Source: Saccostrea echinata
Taxonomy: Eukaryota
DNA length: 64,000 bases
Reading direction: 5' to 3'
Assembly: GCF_033153115.1 (NCBI RefSeq)
Contig: NW_026889760.1
Coordinates: 62,001 to 126,000, forward strand
Positions within the stretch are counted from its first letter, which is position 1. Each line of letters begins with the position of its first letter. The notes beneath the pieces were generated by a model. The model ran no database searches. It saw only the letters and a program-made list of their open reading frames with translations, and was not told the DNA's origin. Position numbers and translations under genes: made by a program. Below, piece by piece: positions 8,601-64,000 of this stretch.

Positions 8601-11600
8601 CAAAAATATCTTTTCAATGCAATGATTTCTGCAGATGATGTAAGTCGTGTGTAAAGGTTTCTATAACTGCAATATAATCAGTAAAAACACCATGCAAAGC
8701 TTCTAACACCACTGATGAGAGCCTACCTGTTGTAACGTCTCCAGAACTATCTGTCTATTAGTCTTCAGTGTGGCCAGTTTGTGTTCGTATAGAGACCGTT
8801 TGTCTGGGACCACGGCCATTAAGTTGTAACGTATGTCATGATAGGGCTCTCTGTAAAGATATATATCACACAGTGCTTGAAATATATAAAATATATATAC
8901 TCTTGAATAAGCACAGTGTAAAACATAGGTAATCAGAGATTACAGAGCCCACCTCAACAAATGTTGTCTCTAAGTAAGGCAAAGTCCCACACTAAACTAA
9001 TAATCTAGTGGTGTGCATCCCTAGATGCAACATTTATGCAATTTTGGTCTGATAGGGCTTGCAGTTACTTGGGAATGGACTTATCTAAAAACTTAAAACT
9101 AGTCACTCATCCAGAAAATGTAAGTCAACAGTGGCGTATATTCCTTTCTGCTAATGTGTAGGCTAATGTGAAGTCACATATTTCACCTGAAACAGGAATT
9201 GCTGGTAGGCAAGGAGGGAGTCGCTCACCCTCAGTGGAAGGTGGGGGTCGGAGAACCATGTAAAAGTTGAATAGGCATAAAAGTGTGGATTGCTAAAAAT
9301 ACTTTTATTGCATTTGATGAAAAAATATTCTAGTAAACTTATAAATAAATAAGATTTATGATCAACTTTCCCCCATTTTTCAACCAAATACATGTATAAA
9401 TATAATATTTTTTACATCAAGAAAATGATGTGTAGGCTACAGCCTTTTTGCCTTATGGAATATACACCATTGGTCAAATCCAGCATCTGAAGCAAGTTTG
9501 AGAGTGTTCATCTCTTGATGCATCATCCATGCAAGTTTGAAGATGTATCATGCATGCAAGTTTGGTCAATATAGGGCTTATAGTTACTTGGAAATAAGAT
9601 CTGCCCCAAAAACTTTAACCTGGTCACTCATCCAGAAAATATAGGTCAAATCCAGCATCTGAAGCAAGTCCAGTAGTGTGAATCCTTAGATGTATCATCC
9701 ATGCAAGTTTGGTCAACATAGGAATTAAAGTTACTAGGAAATGAGATCTGCTCCAAAAACTTTAACCTGTTCACTCATCCAGAAAATATAGGTCAGATCC
9801 AGCATCTGAAGCAAGTCCAGTAGTGTGAATCCTTAGATGTATCATCCATGCAAGTTTGGTCAACATAGGAATTAAAGTTACTTGGAAATGAGATCTGCTC
9901 CAAAAACTTTAATCTGGTCACTCATCTGGAAAATATAGGTCAGATCCAGCATCTGAAGCAAGTCCAGTAGTGTGCATCCTTAGTTGTATCATCCATGCAA
10001 GTTTGGTCAACATAGGAATTAAAGTTACTAGGAAATGAAATCTGCTCCAAAAAACTTTAACCTGGTCACTCATCCACAAAATGTAGGTCAGATCCAGCAT
10101 TCAAAGCAAGTTCAGTAGTGTGCATCCTTAGATGTATCATCCATGCAAGTTTGTTCAATATAGGGCCTATAGTTACTTGGAAATGAGACCTGCTCCTGAC
10201 CAAAAATATTAACCTGGTCATTCTTTAGCTGAAATTGCAGCATCTGAAACCTTGACTGGTGCAATGAAACACACTAGAAGCATCCCCCATGCATCTCTGA
10301 TTAATATAGGGCATAGAAGTATGTGTACTTGAAAAGAAAACTGCTCCAAAAACTCTAACCTGGGACGCCAACGCTGACGCCGATGGTATTACATAAGCTC
10401 CCCCAACTTTGCTGGGGTGAGCTAATAAAAATTACTAAATGTTTCATATCATATCAGTCAAATGAATCTCAGTTACATGTATACTGAATTGGTTTCCATT
10501 AGTACTGTGGATACTTAAAAAAATGGAAAACAAAAGTGGGGGGGGCTTTTAGATCTACAACTTCTCTCCACAGGTTGATTTGCATTAAAACTTTGGCATC
10601 AATTTCTTAGAACATGTCACAGGAGGGAACACTTATTCAGATTAAATATGACAGGGAGGGATGATTTAAGGGGCATGGATGCTTAATGGAGGGAAACCAA
10701 TCACAGACAAGGTCACAGAATTATATACCCAGTCCATTTTACAGTAGTCAATGATTTCTCGTTGATTTGAAAAAGATTAACATGAAGGTATTTAACCAAA
10801 ACAGCAGTAAATTACAAGCAGGGGGTAACAGAAGATCAGTAAGTCCAAATGTAACATGGCGAACAACAAAAGAAGGGACAGGGAAATGAATGCAGAGGAT
10901 TTGGTGCAATACGGGTGGGAAAAACAGTAAGGAGGAATAAAGAAACTGTATAAAGGTTTGTTGATTGTTTTCACCCCAAGAACACTGGATTTCATACTAA
11001 ACATACATGTATTCAGTAAATATGTGCACTAAATATATACACTCAAATCTCATTATCTGGAACTAGATGAGACTGAGAAAAAAGAGAGATATCCGAGGGT
11101 TCAAGATAATAAGGGTAAAACACTTAAAGAATAAGTGGATGGGACTTTCAAATCATGATCAACATATCCATGGTATCTGAGATACCAGTGCTCCAGAAAA
11201 CAAAGTTTAACTGAGTGTTTGTAAGTAAATCGTATTTTACCCTCCCGTGGCCATGCCCAATCTCTCTGTGATAACTCTTCTGAACTTCTCTGTCCAGTAT
11301 TCATCTCTCTCCCATGGACCTGGGAAATCAATATACAGATGTTGTAAGTATACAAAGTATTAAAAAAAAAATTCACCAAGTGTACGAAAAAATTCAGGAG
11401 AATTTTTTGCATAGTCTCCATCTTGTCTTTATTCTAAATGGCTGAATCTAAAGGTGGCTAAATTAACGCTGGCTACATTACTCCAAAGTATATGTATCAA
11501 AATGCTTTTCAGTAATTTTTGAAAATTGCCAAAATTATCATTTAAAATAGTTTTTGAAAAATAACATGAGATAATAATATGATCCATTCTCAAAATTAAT

Positions 11601-14600
11601 TTAGTATAAGTAAAGATAACATTATGTTTAAATATCATTAGAAATCCATGTAGCTGTCTATATACCCAGTATGAGATTATACTGTATTGCTAGCCTAATG
11701 AAAACATCAAAATAATTCTCTTATTTAACATACCCAACTAAAAAAATCTATCAATGAAGATTACTTTGGAGAGAAATAATTATAGAATTGCTAAATGTTT
11801 CAGTATCATAACAAATCCAAACAATTACTAGTTTTATAGTAATTATCCGTCTATCAGTAATAAGAAAAACACAAGATCATTCATTAAGGCATACTACCGT
11901 GATCTATAGGGTAAGGCTTCAATCCATCCAGTTCAAATAACCGGCCATTAATGGGGACATAACTGACATAATGGAAGGCCTCCATAGTTCTCACCGTGGA
12001 CAATCCCTGTTGCTTCTCTGGTGGGTGACGAGGCTCAGGTCTAAAGAAAATGTCCCAAGTTCTTTAACTCAGTGAAATACATGTACTGTATAGTATGCAT
12101 TAGAAGTTGCAAACTCATTCAATCTTTTAATTTTAAAGGCTATATCTAATTACTGTAGATCACCAGATTTTTGCGACACCTTTATTTTAATGAGAAAGGT
12201 ATTTGGTATTTATAAGCGAGACAAAGTTTTCAAGAATTCTCGTTATTGTTGTATTTAGGCTATAATTTTAATAAAAATTATGTGAGAATAATTTTTTGTT
12301 AGCAGACAGTCTCACCTAATTACATGAAAATAATTTTTTTGCGAATAAAAAGTAATTTACAGTACTGTAGATATGAAAACACTAAAAACCTTGCATGACT
12401 GTTGTGAGCTGAAGCTAAAGCTGGCATGTTTCCTATGGCTACACCTTTATCCTGTATAAACAAAAACAGTGTAGAAATTTGAGATTTGAAATGCACATAC
12501 ATGTAACTGTTGAAAATGCAATAATGATATTCTGACAGCTACACGTTTGGTAAATAAATGTACATGTACAAAAATACACAATTGTTAAAATTTATCACAT
12601 TTGCACATACTCTGGTAAAAAATTCTAATCCAGATAAAATGTAAACACAATTATTGCTGAAAAGTTAAAAATCAATCTTGTATGGTAAATATATTTAATT
12701 TATAAAATATTTCTTTAAATATTTTGTTGCTATTTTTTTTTTTTTTGGACAGAGGCCTTCATATTTTGCTGACCTCTGGTCCCATTCCTCTGGAGAATTC
12801 CTTCAGTTTAGACAGAGCCTCCCCCAGCTTGACTCTCTCATCACAGTTCAGCAGCACACTCAGCAAGGCATGGGTGGCACAGGAGTTAGGTATCACCTAC
12901 AGTAAAGTCAAGCATACAATGTCAGGAGTAAGGTATCACCTACAGTAAAATCCAACATACAACAATAGAACACAGAACTTAGGTATCACCTTCATGTAAC
13001 AATGGTAATGTTAAACATACAATGTCATCACCTATGTGTCACAATGGTAAAGACAAACATACAATGTCATCACCTACATGTACCAAGTAACAACAGTAAA
13101 GTCAAACAGTCAGCTATCACCTAACAACAGTCTTGTCAAACATATTAAAAATGTGCTGGAATTAGATGTCACCTACCAACAGGAAAGTCACACATAGAAT
13201 AATAGTATGTGGGAGTTAGATGTCACTTAACAACGGTCTCTTGAAATGTTCTCACAACTAAAACCTTATGATGTTATTTTAACAAAATAATTTAATAACC
13301 TGTTTGTACAACTTTTATCTAACATCTGTACATGTTGCAGAGTTTTAAAAATGTCGCTTTAAATGTTCTCACAACTCAAACCTTATAATGTTAATTATTA
13401 TTTTGATAAACTAATAATTAATAAATAACCTGTTGTGCAAAGAAAATGTTGTTGACAACATTCTCATCCTGTACAAACGATTCTTCTTCCGTTGTTGTTT
13501 TACGTCGACTTCTTCTTTCCTCAATCCATCGGAACAGGAAAATGAACCCATACGCAGTCCTGAAAAGGTTATGATAAATAACATACATACTTAACATTTG
13601 AACATACAATTCATTTCAAACATATAACATGTATACAGGTGCAAGATAAGAGTTAATTAACATATATTTAAAAAAGTTCCAAGTTCAGTGCGCATATGTA
13701 CATTAGCTTGCTTATTTTGTAAGAATGTATCTGAATACAGATGCTGAGTAAAACAAATTGAAAACAGATTTAAGGAGGTTGGATCCTGCCATCAAAAGTA
13801 ATGAGAATTTTTTATCAAGTATATTTTTAGAATTTATACACATAGCTTTATTAAAAATCAAAACAAAAAATGGGGGTCAATGCGCTTCTTTTGGCGCTAC
13901 AGAGCATTTAGTTTGACCTTTTTGCACTGTAAATACGTCTTACACATAAATCAATTTTTAAAGTTTTTCCTTCAATATTTTTTGTTCAAATAAATTATGG
14001 TGAACAAACACAGTCTTATTTCATCTTAAATAGACACATTAAAATTTGTAACAACGAAGAAATTTTTGAATTACTCCGCATGTTCAATTATTTGACCTTT
14101 TTGCACTCAAACATTTTCATTTTTCTGGTATTAAAATTTAACAAGCAAAAAAAATCATTTGAAAGTAATGACATTTTACTGAATTTAAGAAGAATGATTA
14201 AAAGTATCGTATATATTCAGAAAAGAAAATTAAAAGTGGGGGTCTGTGATGTTAATTTTTAGATATTACTAAAATAGTGCTAATTTTAAGCTGAAATTAG
14301 GGCTATTTTTTTCTTCATTTCCACAATATATTTGCTATATTTATCAAATATGATGATAGAATTCATGACAGTTTTTTTAATAGATAATTTAGGACCAGTA
14401 TAAAACAGTTCACTGCACAAAAGAACTATGTGTGCAGACTACATGTAAAAATAGGAATCCAAACTTAACATACTTTTAATTCTTCGAAAGAGAAAAAATG
14501 ATCATTTTCTTCTAAAAAACCTTCCGCCACAAAATATAGTTCCTCACTTAATGCTTTTGGTATGGAATTTAATCATGGAGTTTTAACTGAATATAGTTAA

Positions 14601-18258: not shown

Positions 18259-21200
18259 AGCATCCTTGGGTGAAGGGGGTTCAAGTTTGTTCAAATGAAG
18301 GGCCATGCCCTCTTCCAAGGGGAGATAATTAAGAATAAGTGAAAATTTGGTGTCTTCTTTTAAAAATCTTCTTCTCAAGAACCACAGGGCCAGAAAAGTT
18401 GAAACTTATGGGAAACCTTCGTTACATAGTGTAGATTCAAGTTTGTTCAAATCATGACCCCCGGGGGTAGGGTGGGGCCACTATGGGGGATCAAAGTTTT
18501 ACATAGGAATACATAGGAAAATTCTTTAAAAATCTTCTTCTCAAGAACAACAAAGCCACAATTAGTCATATTGATATGAAATCATCCTCAGGTAATGTAG
18601 ATTCAAGTTTGTCCAAATCATGACCCCCGGGGGTAGGGTGGGGCCACAATGGGGGATCAAAGTTTTACATAGGAATATATAGGAAAATTCTTTAAAAATC
18701 TTCTTCTCAAGAACAACAAAGTCACAATTAGTCATATTGATATGAAATCATCCTCAGAGTAGTGTAGATTTAAGTTTGTTCAAATCATGACCCCCGGGGG
18801 TAGGGTGGGTCCACAATTCCGTTTCAAGAATAGCAAAACCATGATTAGTTATATGAATATAGAAGCATCCTCAGAAAGTTTAGATTCAATTTCATTCAAA
18901 ACATGGCAACTGGGGATAGGTTATGCCTAGAACAGTTGATCAAAGCTTTACGTATGAATATATAGAAGAAGAAATCTGCTGACAAAGAACAGCAGGGCCA
19001 TATTGACTCAGGTGAGCGTTGTGGCCCATGGGCCTCTTGTTTCAGATTTGTTTTAATTCATTTGTCAAGTGAATTAACATTATAGACTAGTGAATTTCAG
19101 TTCAGTAGTCCAGTAATTTCAAGCTCAGTAGTCTTAGGTCATATGAATGTTTATGGAAATTTTAAACCCCTGTGTTACCCCCACTTTATATTTTGATGTG
19201 GGGGAAAGAGTCAGAAGAGGCCCCATTTGAAAATAAACCTTGAATTCCATGCAGCCGACTGGTGTTGCAACATTCCTTACTTTTGCTTCCTAACTTGAAA
19301 CGTTTGTCCACTGCTAAAAATTTTAGTAGGCTTCCCAGTCCAGTTGACTAAGTCTAAGAGAAACTCATGACATCATCTTTTACATTACTTATTATGACAT
19401 ACTGTATGTGTACTTAAAAAAGTGGGCTTCATATTTTAGTTACTTTGGCACAGACAACAATATGTTAATCCATGAATACTGGTAAGAAATCATTTATATA
19501 TACAATATAAGGCATGGACATGTGTAGCGCTAATTCATGATTACACCAACAACTCCATACTAAGTGATTGTGCTAAATTTTGAAAACACCAATTCATGTA
19601 CATGTACAGTAACTCATTAACTCATATGTCATTAAATATGAAAAAGTCACTGCTTCTGAGTGATGAAGAACATGCATGACTGTAAAGATAAATATTTAAG
19701 TCAATACAAGTAGAACTGTCATGACACCAGTATCAGGAAAACCATTATCAATATTTTGAAATTTTTGCTTTCTCCAATGAAATTTCTTCATGTAAATTTA
19801 CATAATTTTCTTTCAGTGGGATCCAATGATAACAACCCTCCCTGGTTTATATTTAGTAACAGTTGGAATCTTGAAGCCCATAATTCTCCTTCTGGGTGCT
19901 GAATCGGTGTGTTCTGTAATGGGTCTCCGATTCATAAATGTTTTGTTCCAGGCCGGAACCTTCTACGTACTGAAAGAGATCTATAAAACAATCCACTCAC
20001 CACCGACAGGGGAGAAGGTAATATAAATGTTAAAAATTATTAATTCATCATTCATTATTATGAGTGTATGCTGTATACCAACTTATTCACGTGCGAGGAA
20101 TATCCATGAGTTTTGCGACACACTTTAACTCGCAAATACCATTTATTTTGCATTGTAATTGAAGAGAATGTTTCCTCAATCGCAAAAATTAATCGTCGCA
20201 GATTGATTTCAAACTGACGAACCGTGAATAATAGTTGGTTTACAGTACATGGTATAGGGTGCAGAAATTTCAACAATGGGGATCACTTTTGGCAGTACAG
20301 ATAAGGAACTCATGATAGATGGCAGACGTGATACTAAGCCACATAAAATTAATTTTTTGATTCTCATCTTAGCCTGTTCTTCTCATATCTGTGTAGGCAT
20401 CAATGATATGTAAACATATATCACACATAAATATATTATTATTCAGAATTACCTATAAATGCCTTATTCTTAGTAAAATACATTTTTTATTGCAGGATGT
20501 CATTAGGATGGCCCTGATTACTGCTGTGACCTTGACCTTGTTCCCTTTGCTCTACTTTTTCACCTTTTTGTACTACACTGACCCAGGATCCACATTCTTT
20601 GTGCTTCTGATGTATCTGTTTCATCTTCGTGGAAATAAATCCTTGGCAGCTTTTATGGGAGGAGAATCCATTTTGTTTCGTCAGTCGAATGTTATCTGGG
20701 TCGTCTTCATGGCAGGTTTAACAGCAGCAGACATCGTTCAGGAATGGATGAAAAGCCAAACTCATGTGAAGAAAAAAGACAAGACATCAACTCCTACCTC
20801 AGAAGGACAAGTCATCTTTAATTTCTTAAAACTTCTGTTCACAAACTTTAAATCAACACCACAGAATATCCTAAAACTAGTATGCCATATACTTATGGGG
20901 TCTTTTTATTACATTAGTGTTATAGGCCTTTTCGGGTTATTTGTACACTATAATGGGGGGATCGTTGTGGGGGATAAATCTCAACATGAGGCCTGTTTAA
21001 ACTATCCCCAAGTCTTCTATTTTGTTTCCTTTACTGTGTTGTTTTTAAGTCCATACACGATCAGTCCCTCACGAATCGCCAACTTCATCCTGTTCTGTGT
21101 AAATCACATTCCATTTACTGTAGCGTTCTTGTCAGTGTCATATGCCCTAGTCAATAAATATACCTATGTTCATCTATACTTAATATCAGACAACAGGCAT

Positions 21201-45500: not shown

Positions 45501-48500
45501 CTATGTATGATCGATTACTAAAATGAGGCAAGCTATTGATATACAAGTTGATGAAAAAAGAACATCAACAGTCTTGTTTAAAGTCAAATTTTCGCAAATT
45601 CTATGGACAATACAGGGTTGTCCCTAAGACCCGTGGGCTGGAGAATTTTCCCACCTATAATGATGTAATCCCCCAGTTATTTTCGTATTCCTCCTAAACT
45701 CCCCATTAGGGAAGGAACCCCAGTTCCCCATCTACTTTTTAAATGTCCTCTTCTTTTTCAATTCTTAGGGACAACCCTGACGATACTATGACCTTGCCAG
45801 CACATACAGTCCATCAATAAGTCAAATGTTGACTGACATTTTTCATACAAATTGTTAGGCCTTTTTTTTTTTTTTTTTTTTAACATTGAATAGCCTATGG
45901 ATTTTTCTGTTTGCCCAGGGGTGTGTGAGCAGTCAACAGGGGATGCTTACTCCTCCATGGCACCTGATCCCACCTCTAATGTTTTTAGAGGTCCATGTTT
46001 GCTTCGCTCCAAATTTGTATTGTTTCAACAGACTTTTGAGCTTGAATACTGTTTGTTATCTTCATACATGTATTTCATGTACATATACTACGGTCACTCA
46101 CTGAAGGCCACATCAACACATTTATGACAATGAGACAAGTTTCACCTGTGACAGCAGCTGATAAATCCAAGGGTGCATCAATCCCTTCTGGTGCCTCTCA
46201 CTGGCGATTCTCATGATTTCAGGGGATACCTGTGGGATTTTAGAGTCTCCTGAGGTTGACTTGTTCTGTTGTTTGCTGTGCATTTGCTGAAACAGAAACA
46301 TTCCAGCATTTAAACAAAGGAATAAGTGACAAATTAGTCAATATTTCACTGAAATCTCTAAGACAAACTGTATGATAAATAATAGATATCTGTTACGAAA
46401 TGATTATGGTATAATAATGCAAACTTATTGTCTAGATTTTGTGGGAGAAGGTATAAAAAATGTACAAAGTCATTGCCTGGATTTTGAGGCCGGGGAATAT
46501 TAATACAAACTTACTGCCTGGATTTTGAGGCAGGAGGTATTATAATACATGACTGAACAGACTTACTGCCTGGATTTTGAGGGACTGGGACCAGTTGGCC
46601 TCTGGGCTGTTTCTGTTGGGACTAGAACCACTGCTGCTGGATGAGGAGGAGGATACAGCGGCTAACATATCTTGACGAATTCCTACAAAACACACCAAAC
46701 TTACTGTGATTTCCTACAAAACACACCAAACTTACAGTGAATTCCTACAAAACACACCAAACTTACTGTGATTTGCATACATATCATGATATTTTTCACT
46801 GGTCCAGTGATTGGGAAGGCCATAAAGGTCAATGGGACTATGGCGCAACTGTCAAAGTTTTTGAAAGTGAATGGGCCATCTTTATATTCTGATGGGCCAT
46901 TTCAAGAAGAAAAAAAATGACTTGTAAACAAAATGTGAAATAAGAAAGGAAACATGTTTCTTTATTAACCAAATCTTATTTTTCACGTATGTTTATGGAG
47001 TGTTGCACATTTAATGGAACACGCAAACAATATAATTTTCTCATATTTTGGATCAATAACGTCAAAATTGGGAAATGAGTGAGGTAATGTACCTTTGATG
47101 TCCTAAATAAAGCGCTTCATGTAACAGGAAACAGTTTTTGCCGGGTTTTAACCAATGAGATTTGTTGTATTAAAATGACTGCATTTAAAACGAAAGTAAA
47201 ACAAGCAAGAAAGTCGTACGCAATATATTTCCAACTAACATAGCTTAAATTTGAATGCCCACCTTGGCACCACCAATGGTTGATTTAATGCGCCAATTAT
47301 CACTTCAATGTGACTATGGCGCATGGCGCAAGCCCTTCCCAATCACTGCTGGTCAAGAAATTTTCATTGTATTGAATAAACAATATTACATTTCTTCACA
47401 AATACATGCAAGAATATATGTACATGTACATAGTTTATGAATCTATATATCTGTTGTAAAACAAAATTATTTTTAAAAAGTGCTGTTTAGTAATTATTAC
47501 ATATTTCTGATTTATATTTAAAATATTTGTTAAACATCTTAAACAGTCAGGGGTGAGACTGAAATCCGTCATTTCTGAAAAATGATGGATAATCGTCATA
47601 TTTACTAACTACGTATTTTCGTCATTTTTGTCAATATGACTTACTATCGTCATATTTCTTTTTCAACTTAATTCTTCTATCCTGGTTACATAAAAGCGAA
47701 ATTTGAATTCACCACTGAAAGAAGAGTGTTTACGCAAGTTTCATTTCATCCGGGTCACTAATTACTGCCAACCACGTGTATTAGACCATCAACATGGAAG
47801 GTGAACGTTATTATTTTGCGGTAAAATGTCGAATTTTGGTAGAACTAATTCGCCATTTTTACATGGCTTTTAGCCCTATAAAAACATATAGTACACCGTC
47901 TGGAAGAATACGTACTTGTAGAGAAAAGTCTCGACAAAAAGTTAAAGCCATAAAAAAGTAGTGCGCCACGTAAAACAAGCGAGATATTTCAGTGAGCCCA
48001 GACCCTCCATTTTGAAAAAAGACGGAATATCGTCATTTTCGTCTTCTTTCCTATTTAATGCAAATAAATTGACAAATAACTCTTCCACTCTTATTTTTGC
48101 TTGGGAAATTTGTACTGTCAACATAACCAGTATTGTAGTCAACTGTATTAGAGAAATGAAGTTTGTTTACGATGTTTTTTGTCCTTTTTTCGGTGTTTAT
48201 GACTGTTTTTCGTCATTTTCTTAAAAATGACGAGTTTAAGTCATAATAAAAATTTTATTTTATGACTAAAAATCGTCATTTTAAAAATGACGGATTTCAG
48301 TCTCAACCCTGACTGTTTAACCTAAAACATTAAAAGTAAAACAGAGACTGAAAAAATATATATTGTAAGTCTGAAAATTTGTTTTTCTGTGTCAATATTT
48401 CTACACACGTATCGAAACATGTATTATCATCACACAAAGTCCATATTATCGATAATTTGATATATCATCCCAGTCCTAATTTGTACTAAGTTTTTTCAAA

Positions 48501-60872: not shown

Positions 60873-61261
60873 TGTTTGTTTGATAAACATGATAAAAAAC
60901 AGTTTCTTATAAACTCTTTTCTTTTCTTTTTTTGTTGAATTCATTTAGTCTAGATATGTGAATACCAAGGACATGTGAAAGAGATTGGCTTATCTAGTCA
61001 TATTATTAATTCAAATTTCTTTTTCATTATCTTAATTATCTATATATCTAATTGTTGGAAGTTTTTCAACAGTCCTACCATGAAAGCTACAAGTATGTTT
61101 CAGATGTTGATGTAACAAAAAATGGAGAGAGAGACAGTAAAGTTGAAAAAATGTTATTGAACTACTGAAAATCGAAAAATATTTGATTCCTTGCAGGCTT
61201 TAGACATGGTGTAGATACCTCAGAAGTTTTTCTCTATCGAGAACCTGTTTTATATTTTGTG

Positions 61262-62140
61262 ATGGATGAGGATGCTCTACGTGGATTGGACCCTCGTGCT
61301 GATCCACAGCTCCAGACTAGGGTAGGTTTTATTATTTGTACATAAATGTCAGTCACATTGGTAGTATTTTGCATTTTTGTCATTTATTTCATGAGGTTAA
61401 GTTTGTTAATTACCTATGGTAAAGAAAAGTATTTTCAATTAAGTAAAACAGTTCTCTTTTTTGGGGGGGAGGGGGGGGGGGGTACAGATTTCAAAGGAAA
61501 CAACTCAGTCTAATATCATGAATATTCACATTTAAGATTTTCAACTGGAATTTAAAAAAAAAATCATGATGTACATTTATTTTGTTGATCAAAGGTAACT
61601 TATAAACAGCATGATGGGGGGGGGGGGGTTGAAAGTCAAGTAGTATTTATACCAACCTCTGGTTTAATTCTGTCATTCAATCTTGTGGAATTTTTGTAGA
61701 CTGACATTCATTATAATGGCAGAGTTCAAGATCTTATCAGTCCATTAAAGATTATTTTATTTTGATCATTAGTTTTTCATCTTGACTGAAATGCCCAAGG
61801 ATTTCATTAGTTGGTTAGTTATACCTCTTTGCCCCTGCAGGGGCATAGGGCCTTGTCAACAACTCTCCATCTTGGGCTGCATGTTTCACTTCCCTCCACA
61901 TGCTCCAGGACATTCAGATAGATCAAAGCTCTGCATCAAGGATCCCTCTCAATGTTGTTGCTGGACGCTTTCTTTTTCTATTGACGTATTGGTTCCAGTT
62001 CAGAGCATGCCTTGTGATGCTATTTTGTGGTCTTCAAAGTATATGACTTATCCAACACTATTTTTGCAGTTTGATAGTCTCTGCTTTGGTTTCTGTTCAA
62101 AAGGAATTCTGTCTCAATCTTTAATTCTTGTTTTGATGGG

Positions 62141-62187
<47 letters not shown>

Positions 62188-62242
62188 CATTTTGTCCGTC
62201 GTCCGTCCGTCTGTCTGTCTGTCCGTCTGTTTTCACATTTTT

Positions 62243-62273
<31 letters not shown>

Positions 62274-63748
62274 TGACCAAACTTGGTACAAAGCATCCTT
62301 GGGTGAAGGGGAATTTAAATTGTTAAAATGAAGGGCCAAGTCCCCTCACAAGGGGAGATAATCAAGAGAAGTCAAAAATAGGGTGGGGTCATTAAAAAAT
62401 CTTCTTCTCAAGAACCACAGGGCCAGTAAAGCTGAAACTTATATGGAAGCATCCTGGGGTAGTGTAGATTCTAATTTGTTCAAATCATGACCCCCGGGGG
62501 TAGGGCGGGGCCACAATGTGGAATCAATGTTTTACATAGAAATATATAGGAAAAATCTTTAAAAATCTTCTTCTCAAGAACAACTGGGCCAGAAAAGCTG
62601 AAACTATTGTGGAAGCATCCTGGGGTAGTGTAGATTCTAAATTGTTAAAATCATGACCCCCGGGGGTAGGGCGGGGCCACAATAGGGAATCCAAGTTTTA
62701 CATTGAAATATATAGAAAAAATCTTTAAAAATCTTCTCAAGAACCATTGGGCCAGAAAAGCTGAAACTAATGTGGAAGCATCTTGGGGTAGTGTAGATTC
62801 TAAATTGTTAAAATCATGACCCCAGGGGGTAGGGCGGGGCCACAAGGGGGAATCCAAGTTTTACATTGAAATATATAGAAAAAATCTTTAAAAATCTTCT
62901 TCTCAAGAACCACTGGGCCAGAAAAGCTGAAACTAATGTGGAAGCATCTTGGGGTAGTGTAGATTCTAAATTGTTAAAATCATGACCCCCGGGGATAGGG
63001 CGGGGCCACAATAGGGAATCCAAGTTTTACATTGAAATATATAGAAACAATCTTTAAAAATCTTCTTCTCAAGAACCACAGGGCCAGAAAAGCTGAAACT
63101 AATGTAGAAGTATCCTGGGGTAGTGTAGATATAAATTGTTAAAAGCATGACCCCCGGGGGTAGGGCGGGGCCACAATAGGGAATCCAAGTTTTACATTGA
63201 AATATATAGAAAAAATCTTTAAAAATCTTCTTCTCAAGAACCACAGGGCCAGAAAAGCTGAAACTAATGTAGAAGTATCCTGGGGTAGTGTAGATTCTAA
63301 ATTGTTAAAATCATGACCCCAGGGGATAGGATGGGACCACAATAGGTGTATTACATGGGGGAAAGTCTGGTGAAGAACAGCTGGGCCAAAGTTACTCAGG
63401 TGAGCGTTGTGGCCCATGGGCCTCTTGTTTCAACTTGTACATGTTGTAAAATTACCGAAGTGAAATAGTATGTATATTATTGTGCAGACGATGCCAATTT
63501 TATTATTTGTAGGCTCTCCAGTACTTTGATTATTATTTGTAGACTCTCCAGTACTTTGGTTATTATTTGTAGGCTCTCCAGTACTTTGATTATTATTTGT
63601 AGGCTCTCCAGTACTTTGATTATTATTTGTAGGCTCTTCAGTACTTTGATTATTATTTGTAGGCTCTCCAGTACTTTGAGCAACTGAAAACATCAGGAGA
63701 TGGATGGAAGTTATGTGCTGCAGCATTTACAAATGGAAGTTACTTTGG
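61262..63748 (+). CDS. XPOT: Exportin-T (tRNA exportin), first two coding exons; a third exon starts at 63998 and continues beyond the window
   Basis: 61262-61321 MDEDALRGLDPRADPQLQTR|gt and 63663-63748 ALQYFEQLKTSGDGWKLCAAAF|gt resemble the exportin-T N-terminus (MDEQALLGLNPNAD...RALAYFEQLK, recalled). Not present in the supplied ORF track. Confidence 0.85.
62141..63429 (+). mobile_element. Complete HINE-like element with ~6 units of the ~165-bp satellite, in an XPOT intron
   Basis: 5' TTTTAGCTCACCTGAGCCGAAGGCTCAAGTGAGC, (GTCC/GTCT)n microsatellite, internal array, and 3' CTCAGGTGAGCGTTGTGGCCCATGGGCCTCTTGTT. Inserted in a T-run. Confidence 0.9.
63498..63678 (+). repeat. 6 x 30-bp tandem repeat spanning the XPOT splice acceptor
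   Basis: Unit TTATTATTTGTAG|GCTCTCCAGTACTTTGA; AGs end at 63512, 63542, 63572, 63602, 63632 and 63662. Confidence 0.95.
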
Positions 63749-64000
63749 GTAAGTGAATAAAAATGACAGTATGTTTTTATGATGCCAATAAATAGCAGGG
63801 ATTTTTATTTTTGCATGTTTTTTCTTGTCAGATTTTTTTTTTTCAAGCAATGTTTATATTCATTAAGATATTCAGTATCCTAGGCAATGAATGAATAATA
63901 CATGTACATGTATCTGAGCTCCAAACTTTTGATTTACTTTCATATGAATGTAGTAAGTTGAAGAACATTCTGTTTAATAGAGTTTCCCATTTTTCAGGAA

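What the first reader, a model, noticed from the sequence alone, without database searches (positions are those of the whole stretch)
63498..63678. XPOT acceptor sextuplicated in a young 30-bp array where each decoy creates an in-frame stop
Six near-identical units each contain a pyrimidine-rich tract, TAG and the first ~16 exon bases. The period is a multiple of 3. Splicing to any upstream AG reads GCT CTC CAG TAC TTT GAT TAT TAT TTG TAG, so the next acceptor's own TAG is the stop codon. Only the sixth AG (63662) gives ALQYFEQLK. The spliceosome must skip five essentially identical 3' splice sites, which is not what first-AG scanning predicts. This makes a natural test of exon definition, or a copy-number-dependent NMD rheostat (inference).
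Basis: partly seen in the sequence, partly recalled or inferred. Interest (0 to 1): 0.75.

Follow-up and report, generated by a model that had tools for sequence, protein, structure and literature searches.

The report
Sixfold repeated splice acceptor in exportin-T
A 30-base piece made of the end of an intron plus the start of the next exon of the exportin-T gene has been copied six times in a row; the available transcripts fit use of the last, genuine copy, so this looks like one more example of a known repeat type and not a special gene control.

Summary
Window 63500-63679 is an exact six-copy, 30-bp tandem array (96% matches), and it occurs nowhere else in the 923-Mb assembly. Each unit holds the last 13 intron bases and the first 17 bases of the second coding exon of an exportin-T (XPOT) gene. 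Splicing to any of the five upstream AGs meets an in-frame TAG after nine codons. Only the AG at 63661-63662 gives the open frame.

Spliced contigs from two RNA runs of what is probably the same species have footprints that fit a join from 61321 to 63663 with no extra units. This is indirect: no joint row was shown, and it is unknown whether those animals carry the array.

The "violates first-AG scanning" argument is weak, because four of the five unit junctions create a branch-point-like TTGAT 13 nt before the next AG. Only the last copy is followed by purine-rich exon and a GTAAGT donor. The NMD-rheostat idea is untested and has no support here.

This is a known kind of repeat: "mirages" in amphioxus, the human F7 IVS7 VNTR (donor side) and CBS 844ins68 (acceptor side). 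Four of ten short-period arrays in this window span acceptors. The scan had already noted many such arrays elsewhere in this genome.

The parts
61197..61321 (+). First coding exon of exportin-T. ATG at 61262-61264, 20 codons (MDEDALRGLDPRADPQLQTR), preceded by an acceptor (cag at 61194-61196) and so joined to an upstream 5'UTR exon.
   Evidence: Sequence. X1 contig record 1 covers L005 95-220 (window 61195-61320) with 0 differences, and 60 further letters of the record lie upstream of the laid stretch.
61322..63662 (+). Phase-0 intron of 2341 nt, from GTAGGT to TAG, if the sixth AG is used.
   Evidence: Contig footprints.
62142..63430 (.). High-copy dispersed element inside the intron, with an internal 166-bp tandem repeat (62395-63346). 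It ends 70 nt before the array.
   Evidence: Depth jumps by factors of 1,000 to 100,000, and loose ends with low-agreement consensus sit at L005 1041/1042 and 2329/2330. TRF rows.
63500..63679 (+). Junction-spanning minisatellite: 6 units of 30 bp, each holding 13 intron bases ending in TAG plus the first 17 exon bases.
63511..63632 (+). Five decoy AGs (G at 63512, 63542, 63572, 63602, 63632). Each would add 30 to 150 nt carrying in-frame TAG stops.
63646..63650 (+). Branch-point-like TTGAT created at a unit junction, with its A at 63649, 13 nt before the true AG. The same motif has its A at 63529, 63589 and 63619. It is lost after unit 2 (TTGGT). Inferred role, not shown.
   Evidence: Motif enumeration.
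63661..63662 (+). AG of the authentic acceptor, the exon-side edge copy of the array.
   Evidence: Footprint of 42 positions in bin L005 2467-2603 in both X1 and X3.
63663..63749 (+). Second coding exon, 87 nt (ALQYFEQLKTSGDGWKLCAAAFTNGSYFG). Bases +18 to +57 are 65% purine.
63750..63755 (+). GTAAGT donor of the next intron.

Best explanation
This is a young, locus-specific junction-spanning minisatellite (a 'mirage'). A 30-bp segment straddling the 3' splice site of the first coding intron of exportin-T was duplicated in tandem and expanded to six copies. Every extra copy lies upstream of the genuine one, so the gene stays intact as long as the spliceosome joins exon 1 to the last AG. The extra copies then simply become intron. 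The available transcripts fit that outcome. The likely reason the last copy wins is inferred, not shown. Every copy has the same AG and pyrimidine tract, and most copies have a junction-made TTGAT branch-like motif. Only the last copy is followed by real exon, which is purine-rich and has a GTAAGT donor 87 nt downstream, so exon definition would stabilise U2AF/U2 there. Any leakage to a decoy gives a transcript with a premature stop, presumably removed by NMD. The in-frame stops follow from the acceptor being TAG and the period being a multiple of 3, so they need not be designed. The array is most likely neutral or slightly deleterious, and it is one of many such arrays in this genome.
For: Anatomy. 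Unique to this locus: 6 of 6 genome matches lie in the array, and the flank 63690-64000 has 1 match in the assembly. Gene identity. Transcripts (arithmetic): X1 record 1 (346 nt, depth 7.9) matches exon 1 with 0 differences. At L005 2580 and 2591 the total depth equals that single contig's depth (7.9 in X1, 6.7 in X3). The three bins give footprints of 42, 44 and 58 positions in both runs, which fits exon 2 from the sixth AG and a whole exon 3. In X3 record 16, exon 5 starts at record position 309, and the depth switches between L005 126 and 150. That leaves room for no extra 30-nt unit. Youth: 3 differences in 180 bases. The organism-B contig piece starts exactly at the first base of unit 6 (from_end arithmetic), which fits a single copy in a relative about 10% diverged. 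No RNA structure hides the decoys: z = +1.94, and 99 of 100 shuffles fold at least as well. Recurrence: 4 of 10 short-period loci in the window span acceptors. Precedent: amphioxus BflGb6 acceptor-side mirages with regular splicing, and CBS 844ins68 with the distal site favoured.
Against: No joint row for 61321>63663 was displayed, because the tables were filled by the high-copy element (688 joints not shown). The junction is therefore inferred from depths and record coordinates. X1 and X3 are Logan contigs, which drop rare isoforms, and both come from one study. It is unknown whether those animals carry six units. The raw RNA run laid (X21) is from a diverged organism and gave only 2 reads on exon 2. 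The TTGAT branch role is a motif match only, and 13 nt is short for a branch-to-AG distance. The single-copy state in organism B rests on where one alignment piece starts. Other X6 contigs contribute depth in bin 2467-2603 and were not shown.
Confidence: 0.72

Rival explanations
1. Leaky decoys with NMD. A substantial share of pre-mRNAs splice to upstream AGs, the stop-containing products are degraded, and XPOT output falls with copy number.
For: All five decoys carry the same 13 intron and 17 exon bases as the true site. Each gives an in-frame stop that lies many exons upstream of the transcript's end. Contigs cannot exclude minor or unstable isoforms.
Against: In 2 of 2 same-species contig sets a single contig runs unbranched from exon 1 into exons 2 and 3, and no second contig adds depth just after the array. 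Similar arrays sit in unrelated genes in the same window, which argues against an XPOT-specific function. The published mirages and CBS 844ins68 splice normally.
Confidence: 0.13
2. Allele-specific expansion. The six-unit array is real, but it is one allele of a length-polymorphic locus. The canonical mRNA seen came from animals or haplotypes with one or few units, so nothing is yet shown about the spliceosome skipping five decoys.
For: Minisatellites of this type are length-polymorphic in F7 (5-9 copies) and in BflGb6 (6 versus 3 units in two haplotypes). No read or contig evidence for the array itself was recovered from X1 or X3, because bin 2330-2466 is swamped and bin 2467-2603 is explained by exon 2 alone.
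Against: None directly. This is a caveat on the transcript evidence and is compatible with the best explanation of what the array is.
Confidence: 0.1
3. Assembly artefact: the array is a collapsed or expanded mis-assembly.
For: No independent DNA reads across the array were seen.
Against: The units carry 3 private substitutions in a fixed order and the boundaries are exact at 6.0 copies. The contig is 5.1 Mb long. Older, decayed arrays of the same kind lie nearby.
Confidence: 0.03

Closest known systems
[quoted passage not shown] PMC3087553 abstract and passages; PMC3902484 passage. The original Adh3 paper was seen only as a citation.
   Same: A tandem array whose unit contains a splice junction. 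BflGb6 is acceptor-side (3' end of the intron plus 5' part of exon 2), with 6 and 3 units in its two haplotypes. Regular splicing is reported despite the repeated AG signals. Units are 81-100% identical.
   Different: The units here are much shorter (30 bp against 150-160 bp in BflGb6). The animal phylum and the gene differ. Polymorphism and splicing in carriers were not shown here.
Human F7 IVS7 37-bp VNTR, and the same arrangement in IFI6 (6-16), CBS IVS13, LMNB2 and PDGFA. PMC1557585 abstract, Introduction and passages.
   Same: A minisatellite whose edge monomer spans an exon/intron boundary, giving 4-8 pseudo-sites of identical sequence that stay silent. It is already used as a natural model of splice-site choice.
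   Different: Those arrays are on the donor side and the most upstream site is used. Here the array is on the acceptor side and the most downstream site fits the transcripts. The 5'-to-3' scanning shown for F7 cannot be carried over to this case.
Human CBS c.844_845ins68. PMC2630376 Introduction passage. Romano et al. 2002 was seen only as a reference title.
   Same: A duplication of an intron/exon acceptor junction. The distal (downstream) site is strongly favoured and normal mRNA is made, so the duplication is harmless.
   Different: Two copies of 68 bp there, six copies of 30 bp here.
Tandem genomic duplication model of intron gain. PMC3443670 section 8.
   Same: A tandem duplication that includes splice signals can be absorbed by splicing without changing the coding sequence.
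   Different: No new intron is created here. An existing intron is lengthened by 150 nt.

Membership tests
Junction-spanning minisatellite ('mirage' / F7-type) | Tandem array whose repeat unit contains an exon/intron boundary | tested here: met
   Six units of 13 intron bases plus 17 exon bases.
Junction-spanning minisatellite ('mirage' / F7-type) | The authentic junction is the edge copy next to the exon body | tested here: met
   Only the sixth AG continues into an open frame. The five others meet TAG.
Junction-spanning minisatellite ('mirage' / F7-type) | Regular splicing persists in carriers | tested here: inconclusive
   Footprints in 2 of 2 same-species contig sets fit the canonical join. 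No joint row was shown and the genotype of those animals is unknown.
Junction-spanning minisatellite ('mirage' / F7-type) | Length polymorphism or instability | not testable with these tools
   No raw DNA reads of the species were on offer, and the single read-laying run was used.
Exportin-T (XPOT/Los1) | Xpo1 domain followed by an Exportin-T domain, in order | tested here: met
   PF08389 hits on 2 pieces. PF19282 hits on 5 pieces at profile positions 6-75, 175-224, 364-462, 467-524 and 587-622. The 29-aa exon 2 alone gives no hit.
Regulated unproductive splicing coupled to NMD | A stop-containing isoform is made at a measurable level | tested here: inconclusive
   None was seen in contigs, but contigs drop rare variants, and the raw run was from a diverged organism.
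Regulated unproductive splicing coupled to NMD | The poison element is conserved in relatives | tested here: inconclusive
   The organism-B contig piece starts at the first base of unit 6, which suggests a single copy there. It is one alignment piece and other contigs were not shown.

The most novel reading that the evidence does not exclude
Decoy acceptors are used at a low rate that rises with copy number, so that a length-polymorphic array tunes exportin-T (and hence tRNA export) through NMD. More broadly, splice junctions in this genome may be preferred sites for minisatellite birth through a junction-linked mutational process, given that 4 of 10 short-period arrays in 64 kb span acceptors against well under 1 expected by chance.
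Probability: 0.1. Interest if true: 0.65.

Novelty: new member of a known kind. Interest (0 to 1): 0.3.

Why it matters
Taken alone, this is one more harmless-looking junction minisatellite. Its value is as a clean natural substrate for studying 3' splice-site choice. It offers six acceptors identical over 30 nt, one natural knock-out of the junction-made TTGAT (after unit 2), and a read-out that is either a normal or a stop-containing mRNA of an essential gene. Together with its neighbours it adds to the case that this genome makes or keeps such arrays at splice junctions far more often than chance. The cause of that excess is unknown and is the more interesting question.

Tried and rejected
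Structure-based hiding of the decoys is rejected. The 321-nt RNA folds worse than its shuffles (z = +1.94).

Recursive splicing is rejected by reading the sequence. Joining exon 1 to a decoy does not recreate a donor.

Intron gain by tandem duplication is rejected for this intron, because the intron ends do not repeat the exon ends.

A dispersed repeat or a pseudogene as the origin of the unit is rejected.

The 29-aa exon 2 matched nothing useful in solved structures (4 hits, all a designer PPR protein, E >= 0.28) and nothing in Pfam.

A survey for more junction arrays went as follows. In a random 200-kb sample of the same contig (L006-L025), TRF gave 41 rows of period 15-80. I inspected 7 loci, chosen for longer period and higher identity, and found 0 with a clear exon after the last copy. 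L022 7300-7388 and L016 8850-8904 have acceptor-like motifs only. The gene content of that sample is unknown, so this says little. A Pfam-anchored exon survey was dropped (below).

The read laying design was poor. I laid the whole intron, and the high-copy element at L005 1042-2330 filled the tables, so the exon 1 to exon 2 joint rows were not displayed. A stretch without that element would have been better.

Pfam gave no significant hit for the exon after the 33.1-kb array (best E = 0.062, INO80E) or for the exon after the 46.7-kb array.

Exons were scanned one by one. Supplementary files were not opened. Additional files 4-6 of PMC3087553 (mirage unit alignments) may bear on the comparison.

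Full report
THE OBSERVATION. Window 63500-63679 is a perfect-register tandem array: period 30, 6.0 copies, 96% matches, no indels, score 339 (family D1). Each unit is 13 intron bases ending in TAG followed by 17 exon bases. Four of the 6 units are identical. Unit 2 has two private changes and unit 5 has one. The unit occurs 6 times in the 923-Mb assembly, all in this array, with 0 hits for the reversed control. The flank 63690-64000 is single-copy. The array is therefore real in the assembly, locus-specific, and far beyond chance. The AG at 63662 and the exon end at 61321 are correct.

THE GENE. The first coding exon runs from about 61197 to 61321, with ATG at 61262 and 20 codons, and ends in phase 0 before GTAGGT. 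The exon after the sixth AG (63663-63749) reads ALQYFEQLKTSGDGWKLCAAAFTNGSYFG and ends before GTAAGT. I fetched 30 kb downstream and listed open segments. I scanned ten exon-sized pieces one by one against Pfam. Two hit Xpo1 and five hit Exportin-T, at profile positions rising from 6 to 622. Six of these seven were above the curated cut-off, and three pieces, including the 29-aa exon 2, hit nothing. The gene is an exportin-T orthologue. My impression that the N-terminus resembles vertebrate XPOT is recalled, not tested. Exons 3 to 6 were placed by reading L001.

CONSEQUENCE OF USING A DECOY. Translation from the first AG gives nine codons and a stop, five times over, before the genuine exon begins. 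This follows from two facts: the acceptor is TAG, and the period is a multiple of three. It needs no selection to explain it.

TRANSCRIPT EVIDENCE. One run search found no run holding more than 0.23 of the sampled words. I laid two contig sets of organism A (X1, X3), a contig set of organism B (X6, probably DNA) and a raw oligo-dT RNA run of organism B (X21) on L005, which is window 61101-65200. A high-copy element at L005 1042-2330 flooded the tables, and no joint row for this intron was displayed (688 joints not shown). What can be read is indirect.
- X1 record 1 (346 nt, depth 7.9) matches exon 1 (L005 95-220) with no differences. It has 60 letters upstream and 160 downstream that lie elsewhere, so it is a spliced mRNA contig of the same or a very close species.
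- At L005 2580 and 2591, just past the array, total depth equals that single contig's depth (7.9 in X1, 6.7 in X3).
- Converting bin depths to covered positions gives 42, 44 and 58 positions in both runs. That fits exon 2 starting at the sixth AG (41 positions plus one ambiguous G), the rest of exon 2 (44 of the 46 positions expected), and a whole 57-nt exon 3.
- In X3 record 16, exon 5 begins at record position 309. With canonical exons this puts the contig start near L005 128. That agrees with the depth switching from 2.48 at position 126 to 6.7 at position 150. One extra 30-nt unit would not fit.

Both same-species sets therefore fit the canonical join with no extra unit. Three caveats apply. 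Contigs hide rare isoforms. Both runs are from one study. It is unknown whether those animals carry six units. X21 gave two reads on exon 2, each with at least 9 differences, so organism B is a diverged relative and told us nothing about junctions.

AGE. There are three differences in 180 bases. In X6, contig 17 aligns to exon 1 and its flanks with 22 differences and 7 gaps in 208 bases. Its second piece runs from L005 2550 to 2627 by the from_end values, so it starts exactly at the first base of unit 6. That is what a single-copy relative would give, but it is one alignment piece, and other X6 contigs add depth in that bin.

HOW THE LAST COPY COULD WIN (INFERRED). The intron between the element's end (63430) and the array has no yUnAy motif. 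The junctions after units 1, 3, 4 and 5 each create TTGAT, with its A 13 nt before the next AG. Unit 2's last-base change destroys the motif there. The question becomes which copy recruits U2AF and U2. Only the last copy is followed by exon body: 65% purine at +18 to +57, against 35% for decoys 1-4 and 45% for decoy 5, with a GTAAGT donor 87 nt downstream. Exon definition is the simplest account. RNA structure is not, because the region folds worse than its shuffles (z = +1.94). Thirteen nucleotides is short for a branch-to-AG distance, so the branch assignment is only a lead.

CONTEXT IN THE WINDOW. TRF over the whole window gives ten loci with period 15-70. Four of them are acceptor-junction arrays.
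- About eight decaying copies lie before an exon on the minus strand, with its first base at 12896. That exon hits Peptidase_C12 at E = 2.5e-9 and looks BAP1-like.
- The intron at 32942-33107 is built almost wholly of copies of its own acceptor junction.
- A 31-bp array of 3.1 copies lies on the minus strand at 46680-46774, before an exon-like open frame. The donor junction of that frame is also present twice.
- The fourth is the XPOT array.

Under random placement the expected number is 0.27-1.05 for 50-150 acceptors, and P(4 or more) is 0.0002-0.02. The acceptor count is assumed, not measured. A random 200-kb sample of unknown gene content gave no clear case among the 7 loci I inspected, out of 41 TRF rows.

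EARLIER NOTES OF THIS SCAN. The notes list many junction arrays elsewhere in this genome. Two follow-ups report transcripts using only the last acceptor copy, in MED15 and in a CFAP157-like gene. Others call the donor-side arrays 'mirages' and report an excess over chance. These are unchecked AI notes. They gave me the word 'mirages', which I then checked in print. They also call the animal an oyster, which I did not verify.

WHAT IS KNOWN IN PRINT.
- PMC3087553 (abstract and passages) describes amphioxus 'mirages'. They include the acceptor-side BflGb6 array, with 6 and 3 units in two haplotypes, and splicing is regular.
- PMC3902484 (one passage) adds PGBD5, Adh and troponin C.
- PMC1557585 (abstract, Introduction and passages) describes the F7 IVS7 37-bp VNTR and lists IFI6, CBS IVS13, LMNB2 and PDGFA. 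All of these are donor-side.
- PMC2630376 (Introduction passage) describes CBS 844ins68, a duplicated intron 7/exon 8 junction in which the distal site is favoured and the mRNA is normal.
- PMC3443670 (section 8) covers intron gain by tandem duplication.
- Gao & Lynch 2009, Zhuo et al. 2007, Romano et al. 2002 and the original Adh3 paper were seen only as citations; the first two were not held.
- Searches listed no paper on such arrays in molluscs or in XPOT. That holds for this library only.

VERDICT. The array is a new member of a known kind. The regulatory reading is unsupported. The specific case has modest interest. The genome-wide excess of junction arrays is the more interesting question, and it has already been raised by the scan.

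Noticed in passing
window 12880-13235, minus strand: About eight progressively decayed copies of an acceptor junction lie upstream of an exon (first base 12896, last base 12774). The exon hits Peptidase_C12 (E = 2.5e-9), carries the catalytic-cysteine motif region, and looks BAP1-like.
   Followed up: partly
window 32942-33135, plus strand: A short intron (about 166 nt) consists almost entirely of four to five copies of its own acceptor junction (TRF periods 29 and 64).
   Followed up: partly
window 46500-46775, minus strand: A 31-bp array of 3.1 copies contains an acceptor-like motif and ends at an exon-like open frame. The donor junction of that frame also occurs twice, about 48 nt apart, and use of the second copy would give an in-frame stop.
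   Followed up: partly
window 62142-63430; also 1-985 and 18359-18817: A very high-copy dispersed element with an internal 166-bp tandem repeat. It is shared at huge depth by organisms A and B in the laid runs. One copy sits inside the XPOT intron, 70 nt before the array.
   Followed up: partly
window 9541-10196; L002 1565-2150 and 5073-6095: A second repeat family with a 147-bp period occurs in the window and twice in XPOT introns downstream.
   Followed up: no
window 61125-61236 (L005 25-136): An X3 contig (387 nt, depth 2.48) reads through the acceptor of the first coding exon. It may be an unspliced transcript or an alternative first exon.
   Followed up: no
window 61465-61482 and 61614-61629: Two long G runs lie in the XPOT intron.
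   Followed up: no
window 41433-41483: A 21-bp repeat of 2.4 copies. On the minus strand it would encode a Pro/Gly/Met/Arg-rich repeat and may be coding.
   Followed up: no
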